Below are positions 1,389-59,277 of a stretch of DNA of 64,000 nucleotides, in pieces. Origin of the DNA: Adineta vaga (lineage: Eukaryota > Animalia > Rotifera). The translations under genes were made by a program, and so were the position numbers. The notes under the pieces are model-generated. The model had not been told where the DNA came from. It saw only the letters and a program-made list of their open reading frames with translations, and ran no database searches. Each line of letters opens with the position of its first letter. Position 1 is the stretch's first letter. The stretch covers positions 1,922,001 to 1,986,000 of the forward strand of contig CP075493.1 in assembly GCA_021613535.1 (NCBI GenBank), written 5' to 3'.

Positions 1389-2436
1389 ATGGCTAATACA
1401 CTTGACGAACTTCGTCAATCAACAATTATTGTTGCTGATACAGGTGATTTTGAATCTCTGAAAAAATATCAACCAACTGATGCAACAACGAATCCTTCAT
1501 TGATATTATCTGCAGCTAATATGAAACAATATGATCATATTATTGAAGATGTTATTAACAAATGTCGAGAAAAACATGGTTCAACATCGAATGAACAAGC
1601 AATTATTGATGATATTATGGATAATGTATTTGTTCGATTTGGTGAAGAAATTTTGAAAATTATTCCTGGACGTGTTTCAACTGAAGTTGATGCACGTCTT
1701 TCCTTTGATCGTGAAGGACAAATGAATAAAGCTCGACATTTAATTGAATTATATGAGAAACATGGTATATCAAAAGATCGAATTTTAATTAAATTATCAT
1801 CGACATGGGAAGGTATTCAAGCTGCAAAAGAATTAGAAGCAAAATATGGTATACATTGTAATATGACTTTGATCTTTTCATTTGCCCAAGCATTGGCATG
1901 TGCTGATGCTCAAGTCACATTGATATCACCATTTGTCGGACGAATTTATGATTGGTATATTGAGAAAAAAGGTAAACGTGATTATGAAATTGAAGCAGAT
2001 CCTGGTGTGGTAAGAAATGAAAAATATAATTTGGAATATTTTTGAAGAAAAAAAAACTGAATTTCTTTAGATGAGTGTTACACGTATTTATAATTATTAT
2101 AAACAAAATAACATTAAAACTGTTGTTATGGGTGCATCATTTCGTAATACAAAACAAATTGTTGGTCTTGCTGGATGTGATTTATTAACAATAAGTCCGA
2201 AATTACTTGATGAATTAAGTTCAAGTCAAGAAAAAATTCAAGTTTATTTAAGTAAAGAACGAAGTGGACATATACGAGATAAAAAATATGATCAAATTGA
2301 TGAGAAAACATTCCGTTGGATGTTAAATGAAGATGAAATGGCAAATGATAAATTAGCTGATGGTATACGAAAATTTGCAGTAGATGCACAAAAACTCGAA
2401 GATCTTATTCGAGCTCGACTTCAACAAAAACAATGA
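1389..2436 (+). CDS. TALDO1: Transaldolase; 2 exons (1389-2009, 2071-2436)
   Basis: Motifs [44 protein letters not shown] (Schiff-base Lys), ISPFVGRI and [12 protein letters not shown] intron at 2010-2070. Confidence 0.97.
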
Positions 2437-10000: not shown

Positions 10001-10169
10001 CTGTTGATATTCTTCCTTTTTCTCTTGTCATATCAAAGACGATTGAGTATAGTTCGAGATATTTGTACACATCAGGCTTAGATCAACATTATTGTGATGT
10101 CAAACACATGAATCTAATCGTTTACATCTGACTAAGTCAAATATTTCTCTCTTGTTCTTCTTCAGTTCT

Positions 10170-10820
10170 ATGGATTATCATTCTCATCGAACATTACTAA
10201 ATACATTGATTAAATCGGAATATTCTTTACGAACAATGAGTAGTGCTGGAAGTGAATCAAGTTTAAGTTCACCATCAACATCGATACTTATTGATGAAAA
10301 TGATGAACATCAACATAAACGTCGTTTAACACGTTTACAACGTCGATTAAATCATCATCCTTATTCTTCATCATCAAAACGTCGACGTCATCAACAAGAG
10401 CAACAAGAACATTCACAACAGCAACAACAACAATTATTGTCACATGATGATGTTCAAAATCAACGTGCAATAGCCAATGTTCGAGAACGACAACGTACAC
10501 AATCGTTAAATGATGCATTTGCTCATCTTCGTTTAATTATTCCAACATTACCATCAGATAAATTATCAAAAATTCAAACATTAAAATTAGCAACACGTTA
10601 TATTGATTTTCTCTATCAAATTCTACATAATGATGATCAACCGAATGTTCAATTACAAAATGATACATCACTAAGTCAATCCAATGAACGAACATTAAGT
10701 TATGCATTTAGTGTTTGGCGAATGGAAGGTGCTTGGTCAACAAATGGTAATACATCAAATGAACAACAGACAACTTTAGATGATATGCCATATTCGCCTG
10801 ATGAATATCAAGACAATTAA
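10170..10820 (+). CDS. twist: Twist bHLH transcription factor; intronless CDS
   Basis: b[54 protein letters not shown] and C-terminal WR motif [17 protein letters not shown]. First in-frame ATG is at 10170. Confidence 0.97.
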
Positions 10821-19407: not shown

Positions 19408-20857
19408 ATGAGCTTGAATATATCATCATCATTGTCATCGAAAACAACTTGTACAAAACGTGAAATTCATGGACCTGAAGCTCCATTTTATCGATGGTTA
19501 GCACTTGGTTATGGTGTTTTATTTATTCTTGCATTAACAGCGAATTTACGTGTACTTTTCAAATTATTTCATTATTCTCGTCGTCGTTTTCGTGATCATA
19601 TTCTTCTATTAAATCTTTGTGCAGCTGATCTATTTGTTACACTGGTTTATATTCCAAGTGAAATCTATACATATACAATTGCACGATGGCATAATGATGG
19701 TATTTGTAAGACATTAGCTGCATTGAAAGGTTTAGGAATATATGTATCATCATGTACAATTATTGGAATATCATTAGATCGATATCTATCGATTGTACAT
19801 CCTTTAACTGTTTATCAATCAAATATTCGAAATAAATTATTTGTTGTTGGATCATGGTTAATATCAGCTATTGCTTGTATACCACAGGTGAAGTTTCATT
19901 GATTTGATTTGATTTGTTTTTATTTTAGTTTAGTTTGTTTTTCTTTCTAGTTGATTATATTTAAACGATTAACCAATGAAGATATTTGTCGTGAAATGTG
20001 TGGCGATACATTATCATCCGATCCAGGCAAACGTCTCGCATATAATATTGCTGTAGCATTATTTGCATATATAGCTCCATTATTGACAATTTTCTATTCT
20101 TATTTTCGCATTTTATATGTCTTACATAAACGATCCGACCGGCGAACATTTCGATTTGTTCGAAGTAGTAGCAATCGAAATAGTTGTGATCTCAATCAAA
20201 TTAATTTACCATTAACATCGACACGAAAAAGTTTTACTCATGAAAGAACGACTAATGGACCTTCTGTCGTTCAAGAAGAGATTAATTCTCATAATATCAA
20301 AACAATAACACGAGCAAAATTAAAAACATTGAAACTCACTGCTTTAATTGGTAATAAAAAACAACAATTTTCTTTCTTCAAAACAAAAACATCAAATTTC
20401 ATTTCATTTTCGTTTAGTTATCTGTTTTATACTTTGTTGGACACCATATTATTGTATTGTATTCTTTCTTTTAATAACCGATGCTCGTATAGATTCGGAA
20501 TCTGCTCAAACAATTGTAATCGATTCATTGAATTCTCAACAGCCAACAAATAATGAACGTTCACTTCTAATTGTCATGATGCTTGCTGTTTCGAATTCGG
20601 TTTTAGATCCATTAATATACGGTAGATTGCTTCATTGGATTTCATTTGAGTATATTTATCTTCTAGGTTGTTTTATGGTTCGAACAATTCCAACGAATTG
20701 TTGTGATCGTTTACGAAATCGACGAGAAACAACAACAACATCGAAACGTACAGCAAATCAATTAGCAAGTGATAAAGAATCAAAATTAACTACATTAAGA
20801 AGTCATATTAAGAATGGAAATCTTCAACGAGAAGCAATTGCTGAATGTCAACTTTAA
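19408..20857 (+). CDS. Rhodopsin-class neuropeptide GPCR, GnRH/AKH/corazonin receptor superfamily; 4 exons (19408-19887, 19951-20350, 20418-20621, 20668-20857)
   Basis: Seven hydrophobic segments. Motifs LLNLCAADLFVT, ISLDRY, ITRAKLKTLKLT (family-typical end of ICL3), CWTPYY and SNSVLDPLIYG (DPxxY, as in GnRH receptors). Confidence 0.85.
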
Positions 20858-27128: not shown

Positions 27129-30100
27129 GTAGACTATTGCCAGGACAAGAAAAAGCAAGGTAACTAGACGACTGTCTTCCTAACCATCGGTACGATTAAC
27201 AAATATCTTCAATATGTTTCCGAGACCTCTTTGCCCTGATTCCAATATGCCAACGGAATTAGAAGAATGTTTATATCATTGTTTTGAAGCTCATCGTCAA
27301 CGAGTACTCGAGCGACGAAGTGCTCGACGAGCAAAACGAGGTAAACAACAATCGGATCAAAATCAGAATGTATCAACAGAACAGTCTCCAACAACGAATT
27401 TTTCTAATACATACGAAGCATCGTCACAATATCAAACTTATCCAACTGAAACAACCGATCAATCAATAGATTATTCAAATTTACTTCAAAATTCACAACA
27501 ATATCAGAATTTATTGACACAACCATCAGATACGTCAGGATATCAAACGAATGTACATCAAGACACATCACAATATCAACAAGTACCATCAAACTTATCG
27601 GAAACGCAAACAGATTATTCAAATATTTTTCAACAATCGCAACAATATCAAGAATTACTTCAACCATCGAACACATCTGTGCCAATGGATACATCTCAAC
27701 AAAATACATTCGAACAAGCAAATATTGATCATTCCGTTACTGTACCAATTCATGCGAATTATCAAACAAGTATTACTAGTACACCAGAACCGTATCATCA
27801 TTTGAAAGATGTTCAATACGCTTCCGAACAAGCTACAACATCATTTACTGATAATCAAGAACAAAACCAAAACTCTACTGAATTTAATAATTATACGCAA
27901 TCATCAGAAACGACAAATTATAATAATGAAAATACTCAATTATATGATCATGGAACAAATCAGAGATTAGATGGTACTTCTATACCAAGTGGCACAGTAG
28001 AATATACAAGGGAATCACACTATTCTCAAGAAACTACAATAAATCAACCAGAAGACACATCTTATATACAACAAACGCAAACATCGGCTGATCAACAATA
28101 CAACGATAATTATACAAACCAAACATCAGCTGCACAAAACTATGATCTGAATAATTATACCAATGAACAGGCAGTTCCACAACAATCGACATTATCATCC
28201 TATGAACAAAATCAACAAGTTTCACAACAAAATATTGCCAATGTACCAATACGATCATTAACACCGAGTGATAGTGGAAGTAGTAGAGATGCACAGGAAG
28301 ATGAAGAAATATTTGATTTACGTAAATGTATTTGTCATTGCTACGCGAAATTTAAAGACGCATGGAATAAAGATCAACAAGAAAGATATCAAGAACAATT
28401 TCGTGGTATTCAGGCACCAATCGCTCAACTAAATGAGCAACAATACCAGCAAGAAACACACCAGGAACAATTTCGTGGTATTCAGGCACCAATCGCTCAA
28501 CTAAATGAGCAACAATACCAGCAAGAAACACACCAGGAACAATTTCGTGGTATTCAGGCACCACTCGCACAATTAAATGAGCAACAATACCAACAAGAAA
28601 GATATCAAGAACAATTTCGTGGTATTCAGGCACCAATCGCACAACTAAATGAGCAACAATACCAGCAAGAAACACACCAGGAACAATTTCCTGGTATTCA
28701 GGCACCAATCACGCAACTAAATGAGCAACAATACCAACAAGAAACACATCAGGAACAATTTCCTGGTATTCAGGCACCAATCACACAACTAAATGAGCAA
28801 CAATACCAACAAGAAACACACCAGGAACAATTTCCTGGTATTCAGGCACCAATCACACAACTAAATGAGCAACAATACCAGCAAGAAGCACACCAGAACA
28901 ATTTCGTGGTATTCAGGCACCAGTCACACAACGATATGAGCAACAATATCAACAGCTACAACGGCGAACACCATGTCCCCCATGTCCACCTTGTCCTCCA
29001 TGCCCACCTTGTCCTCCATGCCCATCCTCCATACTCTGGCATTCCTGAACAGCCATCTATCCCTATTTATCAACCACCACCGACTCCAGTATATCGACCA
29101 CCACCAACACCAGTTTATCAACCACCACCAACCCCAGTTTATCGACCACCACCAACACCAGTTTATCAGCCACCACCTACACCAATTTACCGACCACCAC
29201 CTACACCAGTCTATCAACCACCATCTACACCAATCTACAGACCACCACCTAGTCCAATATATCGACCACCGCCTACACCAGTCTATCGACCACCATGTCC
29301 TCCTTGCCCACCTTGTCCGCCTTGTCCACCGTATCCTTGCGAACCACCAATTCCAACACCAATTCCCTATTTACCTACTCCAGTTCCAACTCCACTACCT
29401 TTTAGATCAACTCCAACTCCTTATTTACCAACTCCTATTCGAACTCCAATTCCTGATTATCGACCACCACCAAGTAATCCTCCTTCTAACCAACAAATCA
29501 TTCAGCAGCACAATACGTTCTTAGCTGTGCATTGTGATCATGCAAAACATGTACCCATACCTGTTAATCAATATGAAATAAATTATACAGATGCAGGAAC
29601 ACAAACGCAATCACTAGTACCACCATGTATTCCAACACCAATACCTGAAATACCAGTAGAACCTTTCTATGAACCACCTCACATACCATTTCAACCAAGA
29701 CTACCAACACCAATTCCATTATTACCACCACCAGAACCATATATTCCTCAGTCTTCTTCATCAGGACGATGGTGTGTAAAATGTTGTTGTGAACCTGGAC
29801 GAACATTGATTAAAAAAATTGTTTACAGAGAGGTGGAAGGTGAATTAACATGTTTTATTTGATTCTTTCACTTACAAATTTTCTCTTCTATTTATTCAGA
29901 TGAACAACAACAACAACAACAGTATCAAGCACAAGAAAGCTATCTTGATTATGGTGCTGTTATGGATCAATTAGAAACGAAAATTACCGTTCGATATGGA
30001 AATGAGATTATGGAAGAAGGCGGCGCGTTCGATTGCGGTAAGAATCAATCAAGTCTATTTATTTTCATATTTGACTTATTCTTTTTCACGATTATAGGTA

Positions 30101-31703: not shown

Positions 31704-33349
31704 CTATTCAATTTGTATGGCATTTGTCGATGATTTATCCATTCGGTTATTATTACTATTCGATCGATTGAGTCTTTTCAATCTTTTAATCAAAATATCT
31801 ACAAAAAAAACACACATTCAAATATCATCAATATTTTCTTATCGGAACAAATTCTTTTACTTCGAACACGTTGTAGTTGAAGAAAATTTTCTTTAAGTTG
31901 TTGTTTACAATCTTGTTCTTTAGTTATTTCATTTTTAAGATCATCTAATAACAAACAATAAATACAATCATATATATATATATAATTGATTCATTTCTAT
32001 TTCATACTTATTTCATTTTCTAATTGTTTTTCACGTTGTCGAGCATTTTCAACGGTTAATTCAATCATATTCTTAATCGGTAGGAAACTTTCCGAAGTAG
32101 TCAGTTGTTGTAATGATAATATTGATGATGATGTCTGTTCGGTAGTCGTCATTGATAGATCAATCGGTTTGGTTGTTAAACGATCTAATAGATAAGAGAA
32201 AGAAAGGATCATTAATCTCATTATTAATCAAAAAGAAGAAAAGTACCTCGATGATGATGATGACTAAGCATTGCATCAATAGTAAAAGATCGTGATTGAT
32301 CTAGAAGAAGAAAAAAAAACGCAAGTTTATCTGATCTTATTCTATTGAATATAAAGTAATCATAGCTAAAGGGTATCTCTTGTCCTCGTTGAAGTTCTTT
32401 TGTGACATGATTGAATTTATTTTGCGTGTCGATATTAATGAACGTGAAAAAGGAAACCATTACTTTCGGTCTGTCTGATTCAACATAAGCTATTCAAATC
32501 GATTTTGACAACAATAATCTTCTGACTTACTTGAAGAAGAAATCGATTGATCAACTGTTGTTAATGGTTGCGATGAACGTATAGAATTACATTGATATGG
32601 ATGAGAATACGAGGATGTTAATGGTAAACAATTGAATAAAGAGAAATTATTTATGGATGGAATTGTTAAATAATCTTGATTTGAAGGTATTGGATATTTG
32701 TAATCCGAAAATGAATGAAGAAAAAGATTTGTAGCTAATTTTAAACGTTTCTCATCTGAATAATCTTCAACTTGATAGGAAGAATTACGTTTTGGTGGAC
32801 GACCAGGACGAGAACTATAAAGACAAAAAACGAATCGAATTATCAATCTATTTAGAAATATACATACCCTGAATTAGTACAATCATCATATAAAACATCG
32901 AATTCATCTGGTGCTAGAAGTTTACATCGATTAACACCTGGTTGTATAGCACCAAGACTTCTTAAAATTCTCACTTGTTCAACATTACAAACAATTGGTA
33001 TGATTTCTAATCGTTTTAATTTCGTATAAACAGTATGTAAACCACCAACTAGATTTTTCAGAAAGAAATCAAATGCTTGCGGTAAACATAATAATTGTCG
33101 ACCGTCAACATTAAATGATGTTAATTTAATTCCACGATAATGAATCATTTTGACACGATTATTTTCGATGGTATTTCGAGCGATAGGTGCTGATTCATAG
33201 ATTGTTTTTTCAAATTTCATAGCATTTAAACGTTGATCATGTTCATAATCATAATGAAGAGAAGTTCGCGATGGTGATGAAGGAGAAAATGCATTCATTG
33301 GTGAATTACTATCATTTGTTGAACAATGTTCTTGTGACATGATAAGCAT
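31704..33349 (-). CDS. dac: Dachshund (Ski/Sno/Dac family); short form with DD1 and a diverged DD2 coiled coil
   Basis: DD1 LLCLPQAFDFFLKNLVGGLHTVYTKLKRLEIIPIVCNVEQVRILRSLGAIQPGVNRCKLL, then SRPGRPPKR. DD2-like IKNMIELTVENARQREKQL. Ends ...AIQIE* at 31704. Confidence 0.95.
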
Positions 33350-42938: not shown

Positions 42939-45900
42939 TCAGGATTTATTCTTAGTAAAGATTGTTTTTAACGAATGTTTTGGTGGAGTTGGTTTTAAAT
43001 GAGTTGCAGTTCGATTATTACGAATTATTGTTCCATTTAAAGTTAGTGTTGTATTTACTCGAGGTTTTGTTTGATTATCTAGAATAGAAAATGCTGAAAG
43101 AAATTAATGAATATTGGAATTTTCAATTTTACCATCATGTGATTCTCGTTCAAGTGATTTTTGATGTGTTAACGATCGTAATAAGAATTTGTCAGTAAAT
43201 GCTTTATTATTGTTATTTATTTCTACATATTCTGATTTTTTAACTAAAACAAACTTTGAATTTGTTGACGTCCATAAACGTTGAATTCCATAAATCTTTT
43301 CATCATCAGTTAATAAACGACGTTTTATTGATTCTCGATGATTTGTACTATTCAAATCTGTTTCTTCAACAAGGCCATAATCATTTGGCATACCATTCAT
43401 ACGAATTTTTCTCATTAACTACAACGATAAAACTTAAGCTTTGCAATGTGAATTTCAAAAGATTTACTTGTGTAATAACATGACTAGCAGTTGAATTGAT
43501 AGGTGTTCGAAAGGTCGTATGTTTTTGTATGGATGATATATTGTAGATTGTAACAAGAAATGTTCGATCACAATTTTCCCAATTTTGAAGAGTTTTATCT
43601 ACTAATGTTGACATTAAGAGATGTTGCTAAAAAGAAAGTTTTGATTTGGAAGTTTTTTTATGAAAGAAAATTTTACTTACAGGTGTTTGAGCTTTTCTCT
43701 TACAAAGAATAACAGTTTCTCGACCAACACGATCCATAACAACAAGTATACGTTCATGTTTTTCTAAAATTCGTGGTGGTATATCAGCATGTTTTGAAGA
43801 TAACGCTTTCTTTTTCCAAGTTTTCGATGATTCTGTAAGAATAATATCATTAATTGTTTCACCAACTTGAAGAAAATCATTGGTTTTAGCGATCTAAAAT
43901 AAAACAATGTTTGTGACAAAGAAAAGAATGTATTATTTTACCATTTCGATTAATTCTTCAACAGTTGTATATTGTGTTACAGCAAATGGTCGAAAGTCTT
44001 CATCACGTCCTTCTTTACCGTAGACTTTAACTTCAAATGTTTTATGTTTAGGTCGTATCGAATCACGATTACCCTATACGAAAAGAAAGACATAAAAGTA
44101 ATCTTATGGAAAAAAAGAGAAATCAATCTGAATAAAATACACTAAGAGCATCCGGTGGATCAATTGTTCGTCCAAATATTCGATTACGAAATAAATGTGG
44201 TGTATTTGATGTTGATAAATCTTGTTCTGTATTACGAAGTAGTATACTTTCTGTTGTTTTTGAATAGATAAATAATGTTGCTAATTCTAATGGAATATTA
44301 GCAGCATCTCTTAAACGAACATGTCGATAACCTTGTCGAAGACATTTTAATGGCATAACACGTTGAGACATTAAATGATTACTTCCGGCATCATAAACAT
44401 GAAAACGTATGAATGCTAATTCCATAAAGAATAACTGAAAATACAAGAATAAGTAAGTCAATGGACTGATATAAATCGTTTCGGAGCGAGAAATTTCTTA
44501 CTTGAAAAATAAATGCTTCTTGCCAAATTGGATTAAGGGAATTTTTAACTGATGGTTTCGTTTTTCTTGACATACAATCAATGGGAATACCAAGAAGTTC
44601 AACTTCAATATAAACACTTGATGTTGAATTGATATTTTGAGTTAAATATTGACCAGAAATAATCTAAGTAGAAAAATACATCTTTTCCTATCAACTATTC
44701 GTTATTAACTTACAGTAATCGTTAGTTCAAAACAAGCACCTTCACGTTCAATAATTGATGGATTAAATCGACCATATTGTGAATGTTCTTTATCCCAAAA
44801 GATAGGCGGTTTTAATACATAACCACAATTACCATTTTGTTCAAACATAGATAAATTCAAAATTTGACCAGAATCTAAACACAACCATTTCTACTGTTTC
44901 AAAAAGAAAAACGCCAAAATTCAATGTACTTACCAAGTGTTTGATAATTCGTTGCAGCTAATCTAAAACAAAATAAGCCATGAAAATATCAACTATAAAA
45001 ATGACCTGAATCAAACACATACTGAATACCATAGATCCATAAATGTAATGGATTAAAATTCGATGAATCTACACGAAAACCACTTGGATAACATCGAATA
45101 AGTTGCGTTTCCGTATGTCTAAATATGAAACTATCGAAAATCCAACGTAATAGACATCGAATAACTTACATAACCATATCACCACCTTGATTTTTACTTA
45201 ATTTCTTAGCTTTATTTTCAATTAATGAAACTATTTGATGGCAAGGTGAAACTTGATCAATTGATCGTGAACTTTCCGTACCTAAAGATCACATAAGAAG
45301 AAAAAACTCGAATGATTTGATTTTTATATTGAAAAACTAACTCGTTGTACTTGGTTGAGCAACAAGTTGTTGAATTGTACGTTTTGGAACTTTACGAACA
45401 GCTTTACCACCAGCAAAACTTGCTAACGTTGATGAACATGATAATCCTTTAAAAAAAAGATAAATGATTTCATACTATCTTCATTAATATTTTCCTACCT
45501 CGAAATTTGATTGCTTGAGTATAAATAACAATATCGGATAATTCTTTTGCCACCAACATTGCTGGTATTTTTGCCATAACATTTGATGATTTATTGATTT
45601 TTATTAAATGATTCGCATCAATTGAACTACTACTTTTTAAACGTTGTCTTGGCTCATTATTCATAATACTATACCGACGATGGCGATATGCTCGTCTAAA
45701 CAAATCAAATAATTAATCGACTCTCATCGATAAGAAGGATAAACTTACAAATCATCTCCATCATCTTGATCAGTTCCAATCGTGATAATTGTCTTTTTCG
45801 GTTGATATATCGGTGAATCAGTAATGGAATTTGATCGTTGTGATTCTCTTCTTGTATATGGATCATAATTATAATCATCTATTAAATCATCATCATCAGA

Positions 45901-48900
45901 ATCATCATCTTCTTCATTATCATCTGGAGATGAATAAACTGAATTTCGATAATTCACACTTAATTGAACTTTTTGTCGACTTAATTGTGATGCTGAATGT
46001 AATTTATTAATTTTCTTATTTTTTATTAGAATTTTATATTTCAATTGATTTGGTGATGGTAATAATGGATCTTCATAGAAATCTGTATCGAACATGTATT
46101 TTGTTATTAATTTATCACCGAAAACTTTCACAAATGTTTGAGCCATACGTGCTTGTTGAATTAATGAACAACGATTTTCAATTGATAATATAACCGGATA
46201 TGGAGATGTTAGAAATGCACTTTCATTGATTACTTCAACGACAAGTTTAAACGAAATTTTACTAACAAATGTTCGTCCATGATAAATTACCGGATAACCA
46301 TCATCACCATCCCAACAATCAAGTTCAACACAACGACATCCAGATAAAAGAGTCTAGAAAGATGAATTTCGATCATCAAAAAAAAACCGAATTCAATGGT
46401 AGATTTCTTACTTCACGATACATTTCAACCGATGATTCACCACGTAATTGATGACCCGTAAGATAAGTATTATGAGATGAAGCAATGAAATAATACGATA
46501 ATGGATTATCCATTTCCTAGAAAACGAACAATAATGAAATTTGCCAAAAAGCCAAATTGAATATCTTACTTGTTCATTAACTTTTGTATGTTCATTAACA
46601 AAAGCATAGTTTTCCTTATCTAATAAATAACGTGAAAAACCTTCGAACGAAAGTACCTTATTCAATCGATTTTGTCGATGTGGTTCATGACGCTATAAAG
46701 AGAACAAAAAACTGAAATTGAAATTCGATGAAATTTACAGATAACTTACATAGATAATTTGTTCAATTTCATATGCACTTTTCTTTTCTTTTTGATGTTC
46801 AAATAGAAAATTTTGAAATTGTTCTTGAGTAATAAGAACATTGCCTCGATTATGTGTACTAATTGCATAACATGGTATGGATGATATAGCAATCATATCA
46901 TAAATACGACGAATATTTGCATCAGTTACATCATCAATCATATTTCGAGTAATAAGACCAGTTAAATGTCTTGAAATATCAAATAAATCATTTTTATATT
47001 GATCTTTCATTATAAAATTTTGTTCAAGATTAATTTCACATGCAAATTTATCGAATAGATCTTTTAAATCACGTCGACAATGAAAATAGAATGATTTAAA
47101 TAATTCGACAAATTCAGGAAAATCCATATGACTTTCATTGATAATCCATGGTGATGACGAATCTTGTATTTGAGTATTGGAATTTAATAATTGCAAACGA
47201 TTACGTTTATTAATCAATACATTAGTCGAAGGATTTAATGTTAATTGATTGATTAAACCAAAACGTTGCTTTGTATTAGTATGATGTTGACTTAATGAAC
47301 GAGCAGTTTTCGTTATTTGAGATGAAGGAGTCGATGATGATGATGATGATTTCGCTCGATGATCAGGAGTTTTAGATTTATCTCGTGTAGCTATTGTAGA
47401 ACTATGTAGTTGCCATTTTGATCTACCCGAAGGTTCAGATTCAGTCGAAAAACTAGCTTTTCGATCCTAAATTGAAAACAAAACGGATCATTATTATAAA
47501 TTATTCAAATTTCGAAAAACATTTTTTCGTTTCATAAATCGTTCAAACAAACCTGTTCAAATTTATTTCGTCTTCGTAAACCTATATTTGACCAGGATTT
47601 TATCACACTTCCCGATTTTTTCGATGTCGTATGTTCACGTTCGTATGGAAATAATGAATTTGAATTCCATTGCCTTCCACCAAAGGTAAGTATAGCATTC
47701 ATTGGTGTTGGCCCTTCAAATCGTTCATTTTCATGATATAATGCAAGATATTGATTTTTAAGCCAAACTATTCGTCGATCCGAACATAGACGATGTTTAC
47801 GATATTGTACAAGTAATTTATCGATATTTGAATACCAAATTTGTGAACAATATTTCGGACTAATAAAGCAAAGACTTCTACAAGAAAGAAAAAAAACATC
47901 AGTTTTTACTTTGAACGAAACTACTAACAGAATATCACTTACTTATTCTCATTAATCGATGCTCCGTAAATAATTGTAAAGCAATTTTCAGGATTTGTTA
48001 TATCATTTAATTTATATCGTTTTATAATTGGTAGTAAATCACAATGAAGAATACCATTACGTATATGTTTAACATATTTTAATTGAATAAAACCTTCGTC
48101 CATATCAACAAAAGCAACATCACGTAAAATATAACGTTTCATTAATATTGAATAATGTGCTGTATCATTCGATACTTGACTATTTAAATTGACATTTTCA
48201 AAACTTCGATGTGTATCCCAAGAAGGTTTTGTCCTAAAATTAAAGAAATCATTGATTAAAACAGATGATTTTATATCAAAAATCAATTACCAAGTTAATG
48301 TACAATTATCTAATTCTAATCGAACAGTAACTAAACATGAATGCATTGTATCTTCATCATAAAAAATCATCGTCGTACCATTTCTATATGAAAATAAGAA
48401 AAACAAACTAGTTGTGGAAAGTGAATACAATTTCGTTCAACAAACCGAAGTATTTGTAAACTATTAAAATCAATAATATGATGCATAGATAATAAAGAAA
48501 CTTCATGATTATGTTTTGGTTGAGCAATTGGTTGATAAAATGAGACATTTAAACAATAGAATGTCTCTGCTTCATCAATATCTAATATCGAACGATACGG
48601 TAATACTGAATTCGCTGCTGCTGCTGCTGCTTTTGTTTCATCAGTTGTATTCATAACATCATTATCACCGATAACATTAATGGCAATATTAGCCATATGA
48701 CGTGAATCAATTTCTCCACCGGTTATGGCAGTATTTGGAAATGATCGATTACGTGTACTTCTTGGTTTTGGTATTCTGAAAGAAAAAAGAGAGTTTCTGA
48801 ATGAAGAATAGTTTTGACAATGAAAAAACAGAACATACTGATCGGTTAAATTATCACCATAGGGTACAGAAACAGTTGCTGAATGTTTTTCTTTCATTTC

Positions 48901-51900
48901 AGGTATGATTGATTGTCGTGGTAATTTCATACGATTAAGATCATTACAACATTTAAATAATGGTAAACGACGATGACAATTATGAAACATAGCAATATCT
49001 TTTAAAACCATATGAACAAGTTCAATCTTGCGCGTATTGATTAATCCACCAACACCAATACCTACAATTACAAAAGATTCATTCTTTTCTTCAATTGAAA
49101 AAGAAAAGTTAAATTATACGTGTTAAAAAATGTTCTTGATTTTGAACTTCAGCAACCGTCTAAATTCATAAAAATCATCAAATTAAAAAAATCATGAACT
49201 TATCAAAGATTTTACTTCAAGTGGTTTTTGTGTATTTCGATTACAGAGAACAACAATACTGGGTACACCACTTAAGATTGTTCGAAGATCTTTAAGAAAT
49301 GTACCAAAAAATGGTACAACTTTACATGTTGGTATATCCAATGCTCGACTAACAGCATCACAATACTGTGGAGTTTTATCATTAGAATTAAATGCATCGG
49401 TAAGAAATTTAAAACCAGGAATTTCATCCGTTATTGTTAACCATAATGGACGAAATGCTTCAATTCTAAAACGAACAAAGAAAACGATATTGATTGATTT
49501 CTGTTCTTTAATAAGACATACTTCAATCCAGCTAAGATTTGCATAGCACTATTGAAATTGCCCATATACCAACATGTTATTGCGCATCGAAGTATGGATG
49601 CAACAATCGCTTTTCGTTCTTGAAAATTTGTTTGTGAAACAATTAATTGTTGAATAAATGATCCAACCTGAATAGAAACAAATCGATCTTTTGAAGAACA
49701 AAAAAAACAAAATTAACTCAATGATAACATACCGCTTGAAAACGTTCGACAAGTATTCGAATACTTTTACCTTGAATTGATGTATCATTTGGTGATAAAA
49801 CTGGTATATCTAATGTTAAATGTCTCAGATATTGTAATGGTGGTACACTAAGAAATATTTCATGTTCAATTTCTGTTAAACGTATTGCAACTTCTTCGGG
49901 AAAATCGAAAAGATATTTCAATTCTTCAAGATCTGATGAGAAACAAAATGGTTGTGTATGATCTATTGGTTGAAGATACGATGGATTTAATACTAAATGA
50001 GATAAGACTGTTGAACGTGTATTTTGCATTAAACGTGTTAAATTTTGTATATGATCAGGTGAAGATTTTCTTGTTGAATGATTGTCATTTGTTTGATCTT
50101 TCGAGAAATTTTTATATAAATCTGTTATTGTTTGATAGGGATTCTTATTTGAATGGGTTGCTAATGATGTTGGTAAAAGTGTCATGCGTCGTCCGCATTG
50201 ATGTGGTTGAGATGTTCGACGCATTGATGAACTGAATGGAATATGTTTATCAAGTAATGCGAAACCTTCGACATTAACAATTTTCCATAAATAAACAGTT
50301 ATAGCACGTAAATCAGCGGTATTATTTAATTGTAAACGCCATTTTGTTTTATTATGAAATTCTAGAACAAGTTCATTGATTCCTGCACTTAAATGATGTC
50401 CACTAGTTATCCAATGGACAAGATCAGCAATACGTTGTTCTTTATAGATAATACGCGTTTTCATATTTAATAAACAGATCTTATCGGAACGAATACAAAG
50501 AAGACGATTGCCCTACGAAAGAAAAAAACAACGAAAGTTAATAGAAGAAGAAATAATTGAAATCGAATGAACAAACTTTTCGTTGTGATCGTTTGGCTTG
50601 GATTTCTTTAACAACATAGATTTCAGCACCATAACTTGGTAAATTTCGACATAAACGAACATAACATTCTTTCAATCGTGTTGGATTGTCGTAATCATTA
50701 ATATGAAATAGTTTACGTTGTTTATCTTTGATTAATTTAAGTATTTCATTACTATGACGAAAATCTGGTGGAAGAAATGGTCTCTTAGATTTATGTGTAT
50801 TAGAATCGGCATCTTTACAACAAGCTATATCAACGAAACGAAATTTTCCCAGATTACGTCGATGTCGATGACGCCATGATGGTCGAATTGTATGAGAACT
50901 ATTACGATTATTTGTACCGGCTGAAGAATTATTTAAAACAATATTTAACGTTTGTAATTCATCCTCTGAAGGGAAGAAAAAAAAAGAATTAATCAATGTG
51001 TTTAATGTAGAATTTTTACCTTCGGCAAGATCAAGATTTTCTTCAGGCCATACTTCAAGACGTAGTTGTAAAGCTGCTAGAGCAGCTGATTCTTCCTTCG
51101 AACATATTAATCTTCCTGAAACAATATCTCTTTGAATTTTAACATATTCTCGACAAATATCTTCGATAATAACATCATCCATTTCTAAATCATTTGCCAC
51201 ATCGGTATCCTAGGAATTAATAGAAATTTCACGATTATCTTTCGAAAGAAGAGGGAAACAACTAAGAATTTACTTGAAGAGCAAGAATTTCTTTAATTTG
51301 ACTTGTCCAAACACGAAATGAACTTCGTAATGATTCGAGTAAAGTAAAAAAACTTTTCAATTCTTTTTGTACAAGATAATCTAGAAGAATGAAATGATAT
51401 AGAATGCATGATTTTGTATTTTATTCGATCACTTACCTTTAAAATCTTCAGGAGATCGTAATACCCAACTTGCAATTAGAACGAGAACATCATTATCCTG
51501 TTTTGTTGCTTTATCTTTTGTTGTTGCAGCCATAATTAATGATTTAATCGAACGTTGTTTTTGTTTTGGTGATGAAAAACTAAAAATTGACTCTTGAGAT
51601 TTATTCAAATCAATTTTTGCTATTCCATTCAAGTGTTGAGTAGATAATTGTTGTTGAGTAGAAAGATAAGCAGAAAGAGAAGAAACTGTACTATCCGATG
51701 AACGTAATGATGCCGTATCACTATGATTTGGTTGTAAACAACCCATCGATGGAGTTAAAGATGATTTTGAAATATTTGTTTCTTGATTATTTGTTGGAAT
51801 AACAATACCATCATTATATGAATGACTGCGATGTAAACCATCGGAATCAATTGGTAAATGAAGTCCGTGACGAGTTAAAGGTATTGATTTTGTCGTATCA

Positions 51901-54900
51901 AGAAAGGTTTTTGGTGAATCATTTCGACGTTCAATTAAAGGTGTTTGTTCAGTATGATTGATCAGATGTGAATCTGTGTGAAGATCTTCTGTCACAAGTG
52001 GTTGTGAATGTGATAGATGTGAAGATGCTTTCAATTTTAAAAAACGTCGATTATACTTGGAAATATTTGCAAAAAGATGATTCTTATTCATTAATACTGC
52101 TGACATATTATCAATAGTTTTCGATGGATGAAAGAATTTTTCAACAGTTTTACGAACCGATGTACGAGTATTAGTTGATATTTTTTGTTGAATTGCTTGA
52201 GAAGAAGAATCATCTTGATCTGAATTGGGATCATCATTTAACGAATGATTACTGTCATCCGATGGAGTACGAACAGCTACAAATGGGATAGGATGAGCGG
52301 TAGAAAGACAACGACCATCAGTGATATTGCTTGTTCCTGATAAAGTAACTAAAAAGAAAAGAAGAAAATCTTTGGGCTATATTCTATATCGTTCAAGAGA
52401 CTAATTAGAATCTTTCCTTCCTTCACTCAGCTCAAATTCTAGTTCTTTCATGAATATTTATGTGAAGTCAGTTTGAGAATCTTTGAACTAAAAAATCAGT
52501 CGGTTTTAAATTGTTTATCTACATACGATTATCATCATGAACGTTTGATTTATTCAATCCATTTGAGAAACTATGTGCATATTCTCGATTAACAATCACA
52601 TTTATCATTGGACTTGCTGGATCAAAATGTGCTGAAAAATCATTGAGAGAAGTTGGACTTGGTAAAAGTGGATTTTGTGAATCACTTAATTGAAATGTTG
52701 GTAAATTTAATAATTCTTTTTCAAATAACTTTATTTCTCCAACACCAGCCGTATTTGTTGTTGCGGTTGTTGTTGGTATTGATCCTGATAATAAAATTGG
52801 ATCATTCTCTACAATTGCTTGTAATAATGAATTACGATCACTGGTATTATTTATTTGTGTATTTTTTTCTGTATTTCTCCAGAACCATTTTCTTGTAGTT
52901 GGTATTGCCGTATTTGTTGTTGATGATGATACCAATGGATTTGAATTATTTGTAGAGAGCGTTGTCGGTGTCGAAAAACGTGATGGATGTTCTAATGAAT
53001 TGATATTATTCGATGGAAAATCATTTGTTGGTGCTGATTGTGAACTTGCTGCCGATGCAGTTGAAATTGATGCACTTGGTGTCACTCGAAGTATTGTACG
53101 ATTTTTGTCAATCGTTGATTGTGAATATTTCGTTGTAGAATTTCCTTGTTGAAAAAGTATTTCTGATCGTGGTATTGTTGGAATGGACGTATTTAGAGCT
53201 GTATTAATAATTGGTGATGTTACTCCATTATTAATCGTTTTACTATCATTTGAGAGATTTCCTGGATTTGTTGTAACTGATTTCTTTTTAAATAGAGGTG
53301 TAAAAATACGATGTTCAAGTAAACGAAGGATAATAACCGGATGTATCACAGATGATAAATAGGAAAGATTATAGAGAAGATTATCATTCGAATTAATAGT
53401 ACCATTTGGTAATGTTGGACTTGTAGGAATTTGTGGAACATCTTGAGATTCTTTTGATGTCGACCTTTTTTGATTAATTCCATTCTAAATGATCAATGTA
53501 GGAAAAAAGACAAATGAATTATTTTCTATTTTGAAGAAAAAAAACAAAACATCCAATCAAATTGATATTTACTTTAAGTAATTCATCAAGTAATTTTTCA
53601 ATACAAATACCAGCAAATGATGCCCATAGAGTACCGACTATTGTTTCACCTACTGCCATATGATGAACGAAATTATTTTCAAATGATTGAGGTTTTTCAC
53701 AATCGAGTGGTTCAGGTTCAACATCTAAATTCATTCAAACTTAACATCTTTCCACTTCCAGTTAATTGCAAATTAAAAGTGCTGTCTGTATGTCATTATA
53801 TATATAAGATACATAAGTTCTTAAGCAGCAGCATATAGAGAAAAATTTGACTTCAAGTAGCATCTCATTAGTATGATAAAGGTAAATATGTACTTACCAA
53901 GGATATCGAATAGATTAACTTTATTACTGACTTTAGTTAATAAACCCATATAAACAAGTATTCGTGCTCCTAGATGTTTAACATAACGTGCAAATTTTGT
54001 GGTTTGATTTGTATAAAACATTTCATCGGCTGGTAAAATTAAATGTAAAACTGTATCAGGTATATCAGCTTGTGTTAAAATTTCATGTGAATCAGGATTT
54101 AATGCTACAACACCCAATGTTTGTAAAGCCAAACAAATTAAATGCTGAAAAAAAAACAAGAAACATATTTCAATGACGAAAAATTATGAAATTTCGACTT
54201 TACCGGATCATTGTTTATATTTAACATATCGATAATAATTGTAAGATTTTCTTTTGTTCGAATAAATCTTCCTTGAAATGTATGATCTTGACAAAGTATT
54301 GTTAATAATCGAGCAGCTAAAATAACAACACAATGATGTGTACAAATTGGTGAACGTGTCGATGGTACACATTTAGGTCGATTATTAAATTCTTTTCTAT
54401 GTCCATCTAAACGTGTATGCATTAAACGTAATAAATGTACTGGTTCAATTTGATAAAGAAGTGAAAATGGTTCAAATGTATATATAGAATTGGAATGATC
54501 ATTTGAAAGAGGAGATAATGAATCGGAATTAAGTAAATGAGGACTTTTTGATAGATCAGATGTTGATCCTTTTGCTGATTGTACTAATGTTGATGTCGAT
54601 GATGAATGAACGATATTTTCATGACTTGATGATGAAATCCATCGTTTTGAAGTTTGACGTGGTGTATCATTTGATATTCCAATATTATTTAATCCTATTG
54701 GAATTGTTGATTGTGGTGTTGTAAGTATTGATTTCGAATTTGATGATCCAATACCAATACTTGATGTTCGTTTTTCATCACCTTCACGAGATATTCGCCG
54801 TAAAATATTCGATAGAGTTGATGATTTTCTCGATCGATTATTCGTATTTTTTATCGTCGATTCATCGTACGTATTTGTTTGATGAATTACATTTTGATTT

Positions 54901-57900
54901 AATTGTCGACGTGATGTTGGTATATAACATGCATTATATCTACCCGGATTAATTAAATTATGATAAACATATATATCATATAAACGATTGATTGTTAACA
55001 AGGCAAGATATTGCATATTAGCTATATCACTCGATAATAATTCTAAGGAAATATCAATTAATTTTTTTGTATGATTTTGAAAATTTTCAATATGTTCACG
55101 TTTATCATGATTACGTAGAAATTCTTGATAGGATGTCTAAATGAACAGAGAAGAAAAATGTTTTAGAAAAATAATCTCAATCTAGATATCTTAACAAACT
55201 TGATAATTCATTTTCTAAGAATCTTATATCGATGAGAAATAATCGCTTCTATTTATTATGTCTTTAGTCATGCTATATCAAGCGTTTTCTCTCAATATAT
55301 ATATATATGTATAATTTGTGACCTTAAACGATCGTAATATATTGATAGAAAATAGAAACAATGATGATTTCAACATCTGTAGAATTGATTAAGAACGTAT
55401 GAAGATGACAGACAATTTTCTGTAAGATTCATTATTTAACATCAAGATGGCAAGTAGTCCTTGGAGGAGAAAGAAGAATATAAATATATATTCAATCATT
55501 TAGAAATCTAATTAACTATTTTCCATTCGAATCTCATTTTTGTTTGATTTTCTTTTTCTATTCATCATCATACACAAGAGAAATAGAAATTGAATTGAAT
55601 TCGTTGACGAATAGAGAATTTTTAAAGAAAATTTTAATCTTATCAATCAATCGAATCCCTTGATTATTTCTAAGAGAGAATTATAACGGAACTTACATTA
55701 AGTAATGTTTGAAGAAGTTCGGCAACTTTTACATGTACTTGTGACGATGTAACTTGACTGATTAATGTTAAAATTTCGTCCATGGAATTTTGCACACGTA
55801 ATAAATCCATTAATTGATCGATACATTCGATATTTGTTGCCAAACGACTTAATTCAGAAAATCGTTTATTAAGACGATCACTAAGTGTATTGGCTAGAAT
55901 AAAATTAGAGAAATTTCAATTGTTGATATCTTAATACTGATGAAAGAAACTTTGTGAACAAAAAATTCTTTCTTTTTTTTTTCTTCTTCTAATAATTAAA
56001 TTTTCAAGTGACGTGAAAAACTGACAGTCAAATGTGATTTCTATTCATTATCTATAATGAACGAAATCAAAAGAAATCAGTCAATGATGTATTCATCAAA
56101 ATGTACTAGAAACTAACGGAAGAACTATGAAAAATGTCCGGAAAAACATTTCTCTCATCGTTATTTTAGATGCATCAGAGAAATCGAGACATATCGTGTT
56201 CAAGTACAGAAAAACGAGTCTATAAATTAGAACGTCCATTTAATTATACAATATTCGTTTGCTTTTTCTATTTCATAGGCAAAATGTTGATTATTTTTGT
56301 TTTCTTTCCGATAAACTATATGACCTAGATTAAATTGACAAGATCAGAAACACATTCTCCAAACAGCCAAGAAATTTCAAAAAGACACCGATTATGAATG
56401 ATGTTACTATCAATAGAATATGTAAGGTATGATGAGAAATGTTGAATACAAAGTTAATTAAGGAAATGAGGTTCTAAAGGAAAAATAAATGGAGTTAAAT
56501 TATAGATTTTTATAATGAAGAATCTGTTGATATCCGGAATTTACAAAGAAGTATCAAATACTAGAATAAATTCAAAAAATTTTTCTTTTACTCTTGCTAA
56601 TGATAATAGTGATTTTTATCAAGGCGTTGTTAATAGTCACGTACATTTCAAATCAGACACTGACTAAAAAAATATGTATTTATTATTTAAAAGCTCAATT
56701 AACAGAAGAAGAAGAAGAAGAAAAGAAGTTCCTTTGCTTTTTAATAAATTACTTCATTCTTTCTTTTTTTGGAACATTTGGTTAATTTAATACATATTAT
56801 CAAGATTAACATATGGAAAAAGGAAAAGAATACGAATGTTATTTGAGAACTTACTTTCTGCTGATGTTTGAGCTGTTGTTGCAGCTGATTGTTGTTGTTG
56901 TCGTGATGATCTATACCATGTAAGATACTAGCAGCCAACGATGCAGTGCCCGTCTATAAAAAACGATATAAAACCTGAAAACATCTTTTCACTATGTTAA
57001 CATCATCGTTCTTTTTCTCTCTTATTCTTTATGTTGATGTAAATCTTTGAAGGTACAGTATAGGATGAATATAATGTTAGAAAATATCAAAACATGCACT
57101 TCCTCTCAAGAACGGAAATTACATTAACAACAATTGAGATGGAAAGATCAACAGACAAGATGAACGATTTGAAGAGCAATGAACTAGATTTTGTACCTAA
57201 AGTTTTAAGTATTAATTCGAATTCATCCGAGACAGATAAATAAATTATTTCTTTCTTGAAATGAGAAAATATTTTTATTCTCAGACTATTGTTTTTCTCA
57301 TATACGTACTTTCCGTTTGGCATGTGATAATCTTCCTGCATGGGAATTTTCTACATCATCACGATCTTCAGAAACTTGTCTCGATTCATTGGGAAGACCT
57401 GTTACACCTTGAATACTATTTTGTGTATTTGTTCCAAAAATTCGTCTTGATTTGCCCATTGAACTTTGAGATGAAAAACTCTTTTTAAACGATTTCGAAT
57501 CATAAGAATCACTTCCACTATAACGAAGAACACGTTTTAAATTTCGCAAACCATTTGCTGGAATAAAACTACTATTTATCGATGTATTATTATAATTAAG
57601 TAAAGATGTTGTTGTTTGATATTGTTCAAGATCTCGAGATAAAAATCGATGACGCTTCGAACTGGATGAATGTTTACGACATAATTTACGAAATTCACGT
57701 TCAACAAAATTTGTTTGTAAATTCTTCACACATGGCCATAATGATAATGGTGTATCACCATATTTATTTGATATTGTTATTGCTGCATGATGAGATATAA
57801 GTATATCACATACATTATATTGTAAACGTGCAGCAAGATGTAATGGACTACAATATAATTCATCACGTACATTGACATTGGCACCATATTTAAGTAAAAG

Positions 57901-59277
57901 TGTACATGCATAATGATTATTACGTTGAGCAGCTAGAAATAATGGTGGTAATGTATATAAACGTTCAGTTGTATAATAACTCGTATAATCAAGTGTACCA
58001 TTACGACGAGATGATGCACGTGGTAGATCAGTTAATAAACGATCAGATATTTGTGATAATGTATTTGAAGGTGATAATTGAGAATTTGATGAAATATTAA
58101 TTGCACTTGGATGTACTATGCATTCGGATCAATACCATATTTCAAACAGATACGCATTACATCTTGAGAATCTAATTTAAAATATAATTAATTATTAGAT
58201 AAATTAGATTAAAATACGGAATCTTTTTTTTTCTAATGTGCCACATCAAATTAATTGACAAGAACAGATAGAAATATGTTAAGAAAATATGAGCGAAAGA
58301 TAGTTGAATTCAATCAAATGAATCTTACCATACATAATTGCAATATGTAAAACATTTCGAAATATTGGTGGTGCATCATTCGGTGAATCACTTGTTGGAT
58401 ATCGCATTTCCTTATGAAAACTTGTTGGTGCTGTAAACATGGAATCATGTTCTGTTTCACAACGTTCATGAATTGATGAACCAATGTTTAAAGATGATGG
58501 ATTCGATGTTAAATGTGTATGTTGATGATTATTAATTAATGCAGCTGCAAGTGGACCTGTTGTATATGTTAATATACTACTTGCTGCATCAAACATAGAA
58601 GTTGTATGTTCAGGTGATGAAAGTGATGGTTGTTCATCGGTATCATTACTAAATAATGCTTGTTTACTATATACTTCAAGTAAATCAGTGTTACTAGTAA
58701 TTGATGGTGAACCAAAGGATGTCGTTGTATGTGAAGGTATTTGTGTAGGTGGTAATGGATGAATTTGAAAACCTGATTGATGATGTGACATACTTGCACG
58801 ATCTTTAATAAGATTAAATTTTGTTTGATGAATATCAATAATTCGACGAACAGTATATTTATCATTATTAATAATTGCTTTTTCTAAATTTTCTGATTCA
58901 CACTAAAACAAAAGAAGAAATCAATGATATTTATCTAGTTTTTTTTTCTTTTTCTCGATTGTTTTCATTACACTCATATCAAGAATTGAACAGATATCCG
59001 ATGTATCATGTGAACTAAATCGTACGACACTATTATTCGATGATCGTCGACTTGTATTCGATGTATCACGTACATCTAAATAACTGGATGATGAATCAGG
59101 ATCAGTTATAATACGCCAATAAGGTGATAATGAACGTGATGAATTCGATTCATGATCAGATGCAATTGATTTTGTTGAATGCAGTAATTGACCATCAACT
59201 TCATCTTCCACCGGAGTTTGTCGTTTAAGTTTTGGTGAACGTACACGACTCAATGGTACAGATAACATTTGTGACAT
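42939..59277 (-). CDS. PLCE1: Phospholipase C epsilon with an extended N-terminus (ankyrin, ARM-like, REM, FERM, CDC25, PH, EF, X, Y, C2, RA1, RA2)
   Basis: X box [25 protein letters not shown] and IYHGRT (both catalytic His present). Y box [24 protein letters not shown] and [15 protein letters not shown]2 NSLNPIW and [13 protein letters not shown]25 [10 protein letters not shown] and [11 protein letters not shown]. Two RA-like C-terminal blocks; TGA at 42939. The 5' exons are phase-compatible back to ATG 59277, apart from one frameshift at about 58117. Confidence 0.9.

What the first reader, a model, noticed from the sequence alone, without database searches (positions are those of the whole stretch)
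48930..59277. Giant PLC-epsilon with ankyrin, ARM-like and FERM modules fused upstream of the RasGEF
Seen: I could chain phase-compatible exons from ATG 59277 into the PLC core. They encode ankyrin repeats (NVLHIAIMY; [29 protein letters not shown]; SPLHLAARL; NKYGDTPL), a helical ARM-like block (about 55890-53900) and a FERM-like central and C lobe ([31 protein letters not shown]; [24 protein letters not shown]; [13 protein letters not shown]; about 51200-50270). Established: the characterised vertebrate PLCE1 and C. elegans PLC-1 have CDC25-PH-EF-X-Y-C2-RA-RA and no ankyrin or FERM domain. Inference: this is a scaffold-type PLC-epsilon that could be anchored to cortical receptors or the cytoskeleton through FERM/ANK, either an ancestral architecture trimmed in vertebrates or a lineage-specific fusion. 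I cannot tell whether similar predicted proteins already exist in other invertebrates.
Basis: partly seen in the sequence, partly recalled or inferred. Interest (0 to 1): 0.8.

Follow-up and report, generated by a model that had tools for sequence, protein, structure and literature searches.

The report
Long ancestral-type PLC-epsilon in rotifer
This rotifer gene is the long form of the signalling enzyme PLC-epsilon that worms, arthropods, snails and starfish also have, so it is not a rotifer invention; the unreported point is that its long front end hides a split helper (REM) domain for the Ras-switch module, which the chordate proteins checked lack.

Summary
The gene is real: a ~4,040-aa PLC-epsilon on the minus strand (59277 to ~42940) of a bdelloid rotifer, with a collinear second copy on contig C4. 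Ankyrin and FERM-central domains pass Pfam cut-offs, and the FERM C-lobe and CDC25 start share one exon.

The novelty premise fails. The same ANK-ARM-FERM-RasGEF-PLC order is annotated in C. elegans long PLC-1 isoforms (NP_001360637.1), other nematodes, an acanthocephalan, arthropods, a snail and starfish. [quoted passage not shown]

Not found in papers: (1) the N-terminus contains a REM domain split by disordered loops, with a FERM F2-F3 bi-lobe (no F1) inserted between REM and CDC25; (2) Capsaspora has ANK-REM-FERM-RasGEF without PLC, a likely fusion partner; (3) amphioxus, hagfish, eel and frog proteins lack the whole module. The two joints linking ANK to ARM were not seen in RNA contigs.

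The parts
42939..59277 (-). PLC-epsilon gene, about 38 exons, about 4,040 aa (boundaries of exons 30-32 and the last exon not fully resolved)
   Evidence: exon/phase tables; collinear second copy G000:C4:12632196-12653735
58120..58416 (-). First ankyrin repeat, split by intron 58328-58172
   Evidence: HMM built from homologues; joint 58329/58171 in a spliced contig
58117..58118 (-). Apparent frameshift: 4 nt missing in this assembly
   Evidence: present in runs X5 and X7; C4 copy in frame
57679..57969 (-). Main ankyrin-repeat block
   Evidence: Pfam Ank E 1.3e-9, Ank_2 E 2.7e-9; dN/dS 0.24 against the C4 copy
56855..56953 (-). Small linker exon 4; 1 nt missing at 56914 in this assembly
   Evidence: run X5; C4 exon is 100 nt; its joints were not seen in RNA contigs
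53898..55893 (-). Armadillo-like helical solenoid (55893-55697, 55136-54930, 54479-54204, 54144-53898) with a disordered loop
   Evidence: homologue HMM blocks; spider homologue model matches beta-catenin Z 15.1, rmsd 4.0 over 222 residues; joints seen; dN/dS 0.03-0.20
53281..53724 (-). REM (RasGEF_N) first half: exon 53724-53573 and 53400-53281
   Evidence: dN/dS 0.06-0.10
51525..53280 (-). About 525-aa Ser/Thr-rich insertion that splits the REM domain (with one short conserved patch)
   Evidence: dN/dS 0.42-0.85 in the loops; low pLDDT in the homologue models
51274..51524 (-). REM second half (51524-51437 and 51380-51274)
   Evidence: dN/dS 0.10-0.18
50577..51185 (-). FERM F2 (central) lobe; a 54-nt stop-free intron at 51019-50966
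   Evidence: Pfam FERM_M E 4.3e-10; the C4 copy changes frame across that intron
50258..50509 (-). FERM F3 (PTB-like) lobe, in the same exon as the start of CDC25
   Evidence: homologue HMM E 1e-20; Atlas leads IRS-PTB/PH; homologue model matches talin F2-F3 Z 14.9, rmsd 2.2 over 184 residues
48950..49963 (-). CDC25 (RasGEF) catalytic domain over five exons
   Evidence: Pfam RasGEF; dN/dS 0.01-0.14
46012..46516 (-). PI-PLC X domain with both catalytic-histidine motifs (SSHNTY, YHGRT)
   Evidence: Pfam PI-PLC-X E 1e-41
42939..45551 (-). Y, C2 and RA regions (inferred from motifs and position)
   Evidence: conserved in the C4 copy; the two pieces scanned alone gave no Pfam hit

Best explanation
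This is the bdelloid orthologue of the long invertebrate PLC-epsilon (C. elegans PLC-1(L) type): ANK - ARM - split REM - FERM(F2-F3) - CDC25 - PH - EF - X - Y - C2 - RA. Shown here: the domains and their order, purifying selection on every folded block, and the same order in single annotated proteins of nematodes, an acanthocephalan, arthropods, a snail and starfish. Supported by a model of a spider homologue: the REM halves fold together and pack on CDC25 as in RasGRP, Epac and SOS, with FERM F2-F3 looped out between them. Inferred mechanism: F2-F3 holds the enzyme at PIP2-rich membrane or on NPxY-type receptor tails; ANK and ARM bind partners; REM-CDC25 loads a Rap/Ras GTPase, which binds the C-terminal RA domain and sustains PIP2/PI4P hydrolysis to DAG and IP3; the loops within REM are likely phosphorylation sites. 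Inferred history: PLC-epsilon arose by fusion of an ANK-REM-FERM-CDC25 exchange factor, still free-standing in Capsaspora, to a PLC core, and chordates kept only a short form starting near CDC25.
For: Pfam per exon. FERM F3 and CDC25 start in one exon. Six spliced joints. Collinear C4 copy; dN/dS 0.01-0.24 in folded blocks against 0.42-0.85 in loops. Window exons match single 3,300-4,400-aa proteins in the same order; names; Pfam ANK+FERM_M+RasGEF+PLC in C. elegans, Trichinella and Asterias proteins. REM: weak Pfam RasGEF_N in 3 of 16 homologues; composite profile against Capsaspora REM P 96.8, E 3e-10, against amoebozoan REM E 7e-4, score 26.9 versus shuffled maximum 16.5; structure alignment covers 297-339 residues of REM+CDC25 chains but about 200 of CDC25-only chains. 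Capsaspora CAOG_03360 = ANK, RasGEF_N, FERM_M, PTB-like, RasGEF, no PLC. Chordate proteins lack all N-terminal blocks. PLC-1(L) is needed for taste-avoidance learning and has a FERM domain (PMC8752840).
Against: Joints 57309/56953 and 56854/55893 (ANK to ARM) were not covered by any RNA contig. No full-length rotifer cDNA was seen. The REM packing comes from a model of a homologue (pTM 0.57, rmsd 4.6-6.4 A to REM-CDC25 chains), not of the rotifer protein, and two of its rotifer pieces score weakly alone (E 0.3 and 0.6). ARM homology to Capsaspora is not significant. The chordate loss rests on six annotated proteins of four lineages and one amphioxus locus with 10 kb upstream. No tree was built. 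No activity was measured.
Confidence: 0.85

Rival explanations
1. In this rotifer the ankyrin exons form a separate transcript, and PLC-epsilon starts at or after the ARM block.
For: The two joints across the longer introns were not seen; these introns are 1-2.8 kb in the C4 copy and could hold promoters; C. elegans annotation once had separate 'FERM domain family' proteins.
Against: Exon 3 ends at a donor conserved in both copies with no conserved stop; exon 4 and its phases are conserved and fit exon 5; the acanthocephalan and many other animals have ANK and PLC in one protein.
Confidence: 0.07
2. The long form is real, but the helices between ARM and FERM are only further solenoid repeats, not a REM that serves CDC25.
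For: No Pfam RasGEF_N hit reaches the cut-off in any animal protein; the ARM+REM model returned only armadillo-type matches; PDB sequence search found no REM.
Against: The pieces align in order with the Pfam-positive REM of Capsaspora and add about 100-140 aligned residues to REM+CDC25 structures.
Confidence: 0.12
3. A rotifer-specific fusion of ANK and FERM modules to PLC-epsilon.
For: None beyond the short domain diagram in vertebrate literature (PMC13022664).
Against: Same blocks in the same order in protostomes and deuterostomes.
Confidence: 0.01
4. The window copy is a decaying pseudogene with two frameshifts, and the C4 copy does the work.
For: Stop after the first ankyrin repeat and a phase break in exon 4 in the assembly.
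Against: Read contigs carry the missing letters; low dN/dS throughout; spliced contigs exist.
Confidence: 0.02

Closest known systems
C. elegans PLC-1 long isoforms, PLC-1(L) (NP_001360637.1, NP_001359720.1; Tomioka et al. 2022, PMC8752840)
   Same: ANK, ARM-like block, split REM, FERM F2-F3, CDC25 and PLC core in the same order.
   Different: The rotifer protein is about 500 aa longer through loops; the worm RXRXXT Akt sites are not conserved; the paper's text names FERM only, not ankyrin, ARM or REM; short isoforms are known in the worm and untested in the rotifer.
Vertebrate PLCE1 (review PMC13022664; cryo-EM PMC12501065)
   Same: CDC25 domain upstream of the PLC core.
   Different: Lacks ANK, ARM, REM and FERM blocks in the frog, eel and hagfish proteins tested; neither paper mentions REM, FERM or ankyrin.
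Capsaspora owczarzaki CAOG_03360 (KJE92380.1)
   Same: ANK, REM, FERM F2-F3, CDC25 in the same order, collinear with scorpion PLC-epsilon (E 3e-33 for F2b-F3-CDC25).
   Different: No PLC core; REM compact and above the Pfam cut-off; ARM homology not significant.
REM-CDC25 exchange factors (RasGRP, Epac, SOS, RasGRF)
   Same: Predicted REM-CDC25 arrangement.
   Different: Here the REM is split by loops of hundreds of residues and a FERM bi-lobe sits between REM and CDC25.
Talin head and KRIT1 (ANK-FERM)
   Same: F2-F3 fold (talin Z 14.9, KRIT1 Z 13.2).
   Different: No F1 lobe; ANK is far from FERM; fold similarity only.

Membership tests
PLC-epsilon | PI-PLC X domain with catalytic motifs | tested here: met
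   Pfam E 1e-41; SSHNTY, ELDCWDG and YHGRT present
PLC-epsilon | CDC25 domain N-terminal to the PLC core | tested here: met
PLC-epsilon | C2 and C-terminal RA domains | tested here: inconclusive
   two single pieces gave no Pfam hit; conserved in the C4 copy; present in full-length homologues
PLC-epsilon | Y domain | not tested
   motif [14 protein letters not shown] seen in the sequence; not scanned
PLC-epsilon | Phosphoinositide hydrolysis and Rap1 exchange activity | not testable with these tools
   needs biochemistry
PLC-1(L)-type long PLC-epsilon | ANK, ARM-like and FERM blocks in conserved order before CDC25 | tested here: met
PLC-1(L)-type long PLC-epsilon | All blocks on one mRNA | tested here: inconclusive
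   six joints seen; the two ANK-to-ARM joints not covered
FERM domain | F2 acyl-CoA-binding-like lobe | tested here: met
   Pfam FERM_M above cut-off
FERM domain | F3 PTB/PH-like lobe | tested here: met
   homologue HMM; homologue model matches talin F2-F3; Pfam FERM_C itself not hit
FERM domain | F1 ubiquitin-like lobe | tested here: not met
   F2 follows the last REM helix within about 10-25 residues and the model is all-helical there; so a partial (F2-F3) FERM, not a complete one
REM (RasGEF_N) | Pfam PF00618 above cut-off | tested here: not met
   best E 0.0035 in homologues, none in window exons; the domain is split
REM (RasGEF_N) | Profile similarity to known REM with elements in order | tested here: met
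   hhalign; BLAST
REM (RasGEF_N) | Packs against CDC25 | tested here: met
   predicted model of the spider homologue only; moderate confidence
Armadillo repeats | Armadillo-type helical solenoid | tested here: met
   homologue model; no Pfam Arm hit, so 'ARM-like' by fold

The most novel reading that the evidence does not exclude
PLC-epsilon originated by fusion of a pre-animal ANK-REM-FERM-CDC25 exchange factor (kept in Capsaspora) with a PLC core. Most invertebrates keep a long form with a complete REM-CDC25 unit whose REM is split by regulatory loops and carries an inserted FERM F2-F3 membrane anchor, whereas chordates lost the module, so the mammalian enzyme is a derived, REM-less GEF. I found no paper stating this.
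Probability: 0.6. Interest if true: 0.55.

Novelty: new member of a known kind. Interest (0 to 1): 0.38.

Why it matters
The gene itself is an ordinary orthologue of an annotated long isoform. The structural reading is useful to PLC-epsilon specialists: how the N-terminus and CDC25 domain work and how the enzyme reaches membranes are listed as open questions (PMC13022664). It says that the textbook domain diagram is the trimmed chordate form, gives a testable reason for the isoform-specific learning phenotype of worm PLC-1(L), and places three of four worm RXRXXT sites inside the loops that split the REM domain.

Tried and rejected
Word search with the FERM-CDC25 exon found only rotifer fragments, so the one big search was used because the claim rested on relatives. 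PDB sequence searches with the F3-CDC25 and REM alignments found nothing useful. Pfam found no family for the ARM, REM or F3 exons alone. Seven paper searches with FERM/ankyrin/REM terms found nothing on this architecture; the 'long isoform' search found PMC8752840. A recalled link to the gene name frm-9 was not confirmed by papers, though old worm 'FERM domain family' proteins fall in the PLC-1 cluster. An alternative acceptor at 58115 that would bypass the stop was rejected: the spliced contig uses 58171. Conservation of worm Akt sites was tested and not found. The 52.8-kb amphioxus locus gave only CDC25 hits.

Full report
Setting. The window is G000:C1:1922001-1986000 of a 100.8-Mb, six-contig, AT-rich genome. 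The nearest named proteins are from Rotaria, and earlier scan notes name the genome Adineta vaga (not verified beyond these facts). The gene lies on the minus strand from ATG 59277 to about 42940, with about 38 exons and about 4,040 codons. A diverged copy with the same exon order lies at C4:12632196-12653735.

Observation check. The quoted motifs are present. Pfam finds ankyrin repeats in 57310-58128 (E 1e-9) and FERM_M in 50577-51209 (E 4e-10), both above cut-off, then RasGEF and PI-PLC-X. The FERM C-lobe and the first CDC25 helices are in one exon, 50512-49733. The assembled sequence does not chain in phase: there is a stop after the first ankyrin repeat and a phase break in exon 4. The C4 copy is in frame at both places. 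Read contigs carry 4 extra letters at 58117-58118 (one DNA run, one spliced run) and 1 at 56914 (DNA run), so both are assembly errors. Spliced contigs show joints 58329/58171, 55697/55136, 54204/54144, 53898/53724 and 53573/53484, and a loose end at 52527 matches the next exon. The joints 57309/56953 and 56854/55893 were not covered. Between the two copies dN/dS is 0.01-0.24 in every folded block and 0.42-0.85 in the loops.

Relatives. The big search with a Rotaria fragment spanning FERM to CDC25 returned many proteins of 2,200-3,600 aa. They are PLC-epsilon proteins of Pomphorhynchus, nematodes, ticks, spider, Adelges, starfish, Saccoglossus and snails. Two follow-up searches listed dozens more with Ank, FERM_M, RasGEF and PLC families in one chain. 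The window's exons match these proteins in order. C. elegans RefSeq isoforms of about 3,500 aa have the architecture. Tomioka et al. 2022 (PMC8752840) describe long and short PLC-1 isoforms, report a FERM domain in the long N-terminus, propose membrane targeting, and show that the long form and its putative Akt sites are needed for taste-avoidance learning.

Anatomy of the N-terminus. An alignment of 23 long homologues gave conserved blocks separated by variable loops. AlphaFold models were made of the compact spider homologue. The block after ANK is an armadillo-type solenoid (beta-catenin Z 15.1, rmsd 4.0 A, 222 residues). The FERM part matches talin F2-F3 (Z 14.9, rmsd 2.2 A, 184 residues) and has no F1 lobe. 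Three blocks between ARM and F2 read as a split REM domain. Pfam RasGEF_N appears weakly in 3 of 16 homologues. The composite profile matches the Pfam-positive REM of Capsaspora (P 96.8, E 3e-10) and amoebozoan REMs (E 7e-4; score 26.9 against a shuffled maximum of 16.5). In the model, chains with REM+CDC25 (RasGRP2, Epac2, RasGRP1, Cdc25, SOS1, Rlf) align over 297-339 residues starting at model residue 18-27, whereas CDC25-only chains align over about 200. The rotifer pieces are 53724-53573, 53400-53281, 51524-51437 and 51380-51274; they link to these blocks directly or through closer homologues. Caveats: pTM 0.57, rmsd 4.6-6.4 A, and a homologue rather than the rotifer protein.

Evolution. 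Capsaspora CAOG_03360 has ANK, RasGEF_N, FERM_M, a PTB-like lobe and RasGEF but no PLC, collinear with scorpion PLC-epsilon. Echinoderm proteins keep the full module and hemichordate models keep at least FERM, while amphioxus, hagfish, eel and frog proteins hit only the CDC25 block; the amphioxus locus with 10 kb upstream gave no N-terminal block. The simplest reading (inference) is fusion of an ANK-REM-FERM-CDC25 exchange factor to a PLC core before the protostome-deuterostome split, and loss of the module in chordates. Some insect and other invertebrate entries are also short, which may be short isoforms or split models. No tree was built and cnidarians and sponges were not identified among the hits.

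Mechanism. From established work on mammalian PLC-epsilon (PMC13022664), CDC25 loads Rap1A, which binds RA2 and sustains lipase activity. For the long form I infer that F2-F3 supplies membrane or receptor-tail anchoring, ANK and ARM supply partner binding, and REM completes the canonical exchange unit. Three of four worm RXRXXT sites lie in the loops that split the REM and the fourth in the F2 insertion, but they are nematode-specific and absent at those positions in the rotifer. None of these functions was measured.

Verdict. The finding is a real gene and a new member of a known, already annotated kind, with FERM published for the worm. The split REM, the FERM insertion between REM and CDC25, the Capsaspora precursor and the chordate loss were not found in the papers I could search (10 searches, open-access library only; searches show no mention in two recent structural papers). 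They are general to invertebrate PLC-epsilon rather than special to this window. Interest 0.38.

Noticed in passing
window 58117-58118 and 56914 (also non-coding 53501, 53537, 54148, 56209, 56957, 57045): Small indels relative to read contigs; two break the reading frame. Frameshifts in this assembly should be checked against reads before a gene is called broken.
   Followed up: yes
window 51019-50966: A 54-nt stop-free intron inside the FERM F2 region reads through in frame; the C4 copy changes frame there, so it is an intron and not coding.
   Followed up: partly
P0306 / P0182 (Capsaspora CAOG_03360): Stand-alone ANK-REM-FERM-RasGEF protein without PLC; no paper found on it.
   Followed up: partly
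P0280, P0281, P0116, P0217, P0235: Nematode entries that hold only the N-terminal module (old C. elegans 'FERM domain family' proteins and others); either split gene models or PLC-less isoforms.
   Followed up: no
window 59967-59896 (-); C4 12631169-12631240: Short stretch about 650 nt upstream of the ATG conserved between the two copies; possible 5' exon or regulatory element.
   Followed up: no
   Followed up: no
window 27214-29862 (+): 882-aa single ORF with Gln-rich tandem repeats and Pro/Tyr-rich repeats, causing the local GC rise; function not examined.
   Followed up: no
window 1389-2045 (+), 10152-10820 (+), 19408-20857 (+), 32852-33349 (-): ORFs that look by eye like transaldolase, a Twist-type bHLH, a peptide GPCR and a Dachshund/Ski-type domain; not scanned.
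   Followed up: no
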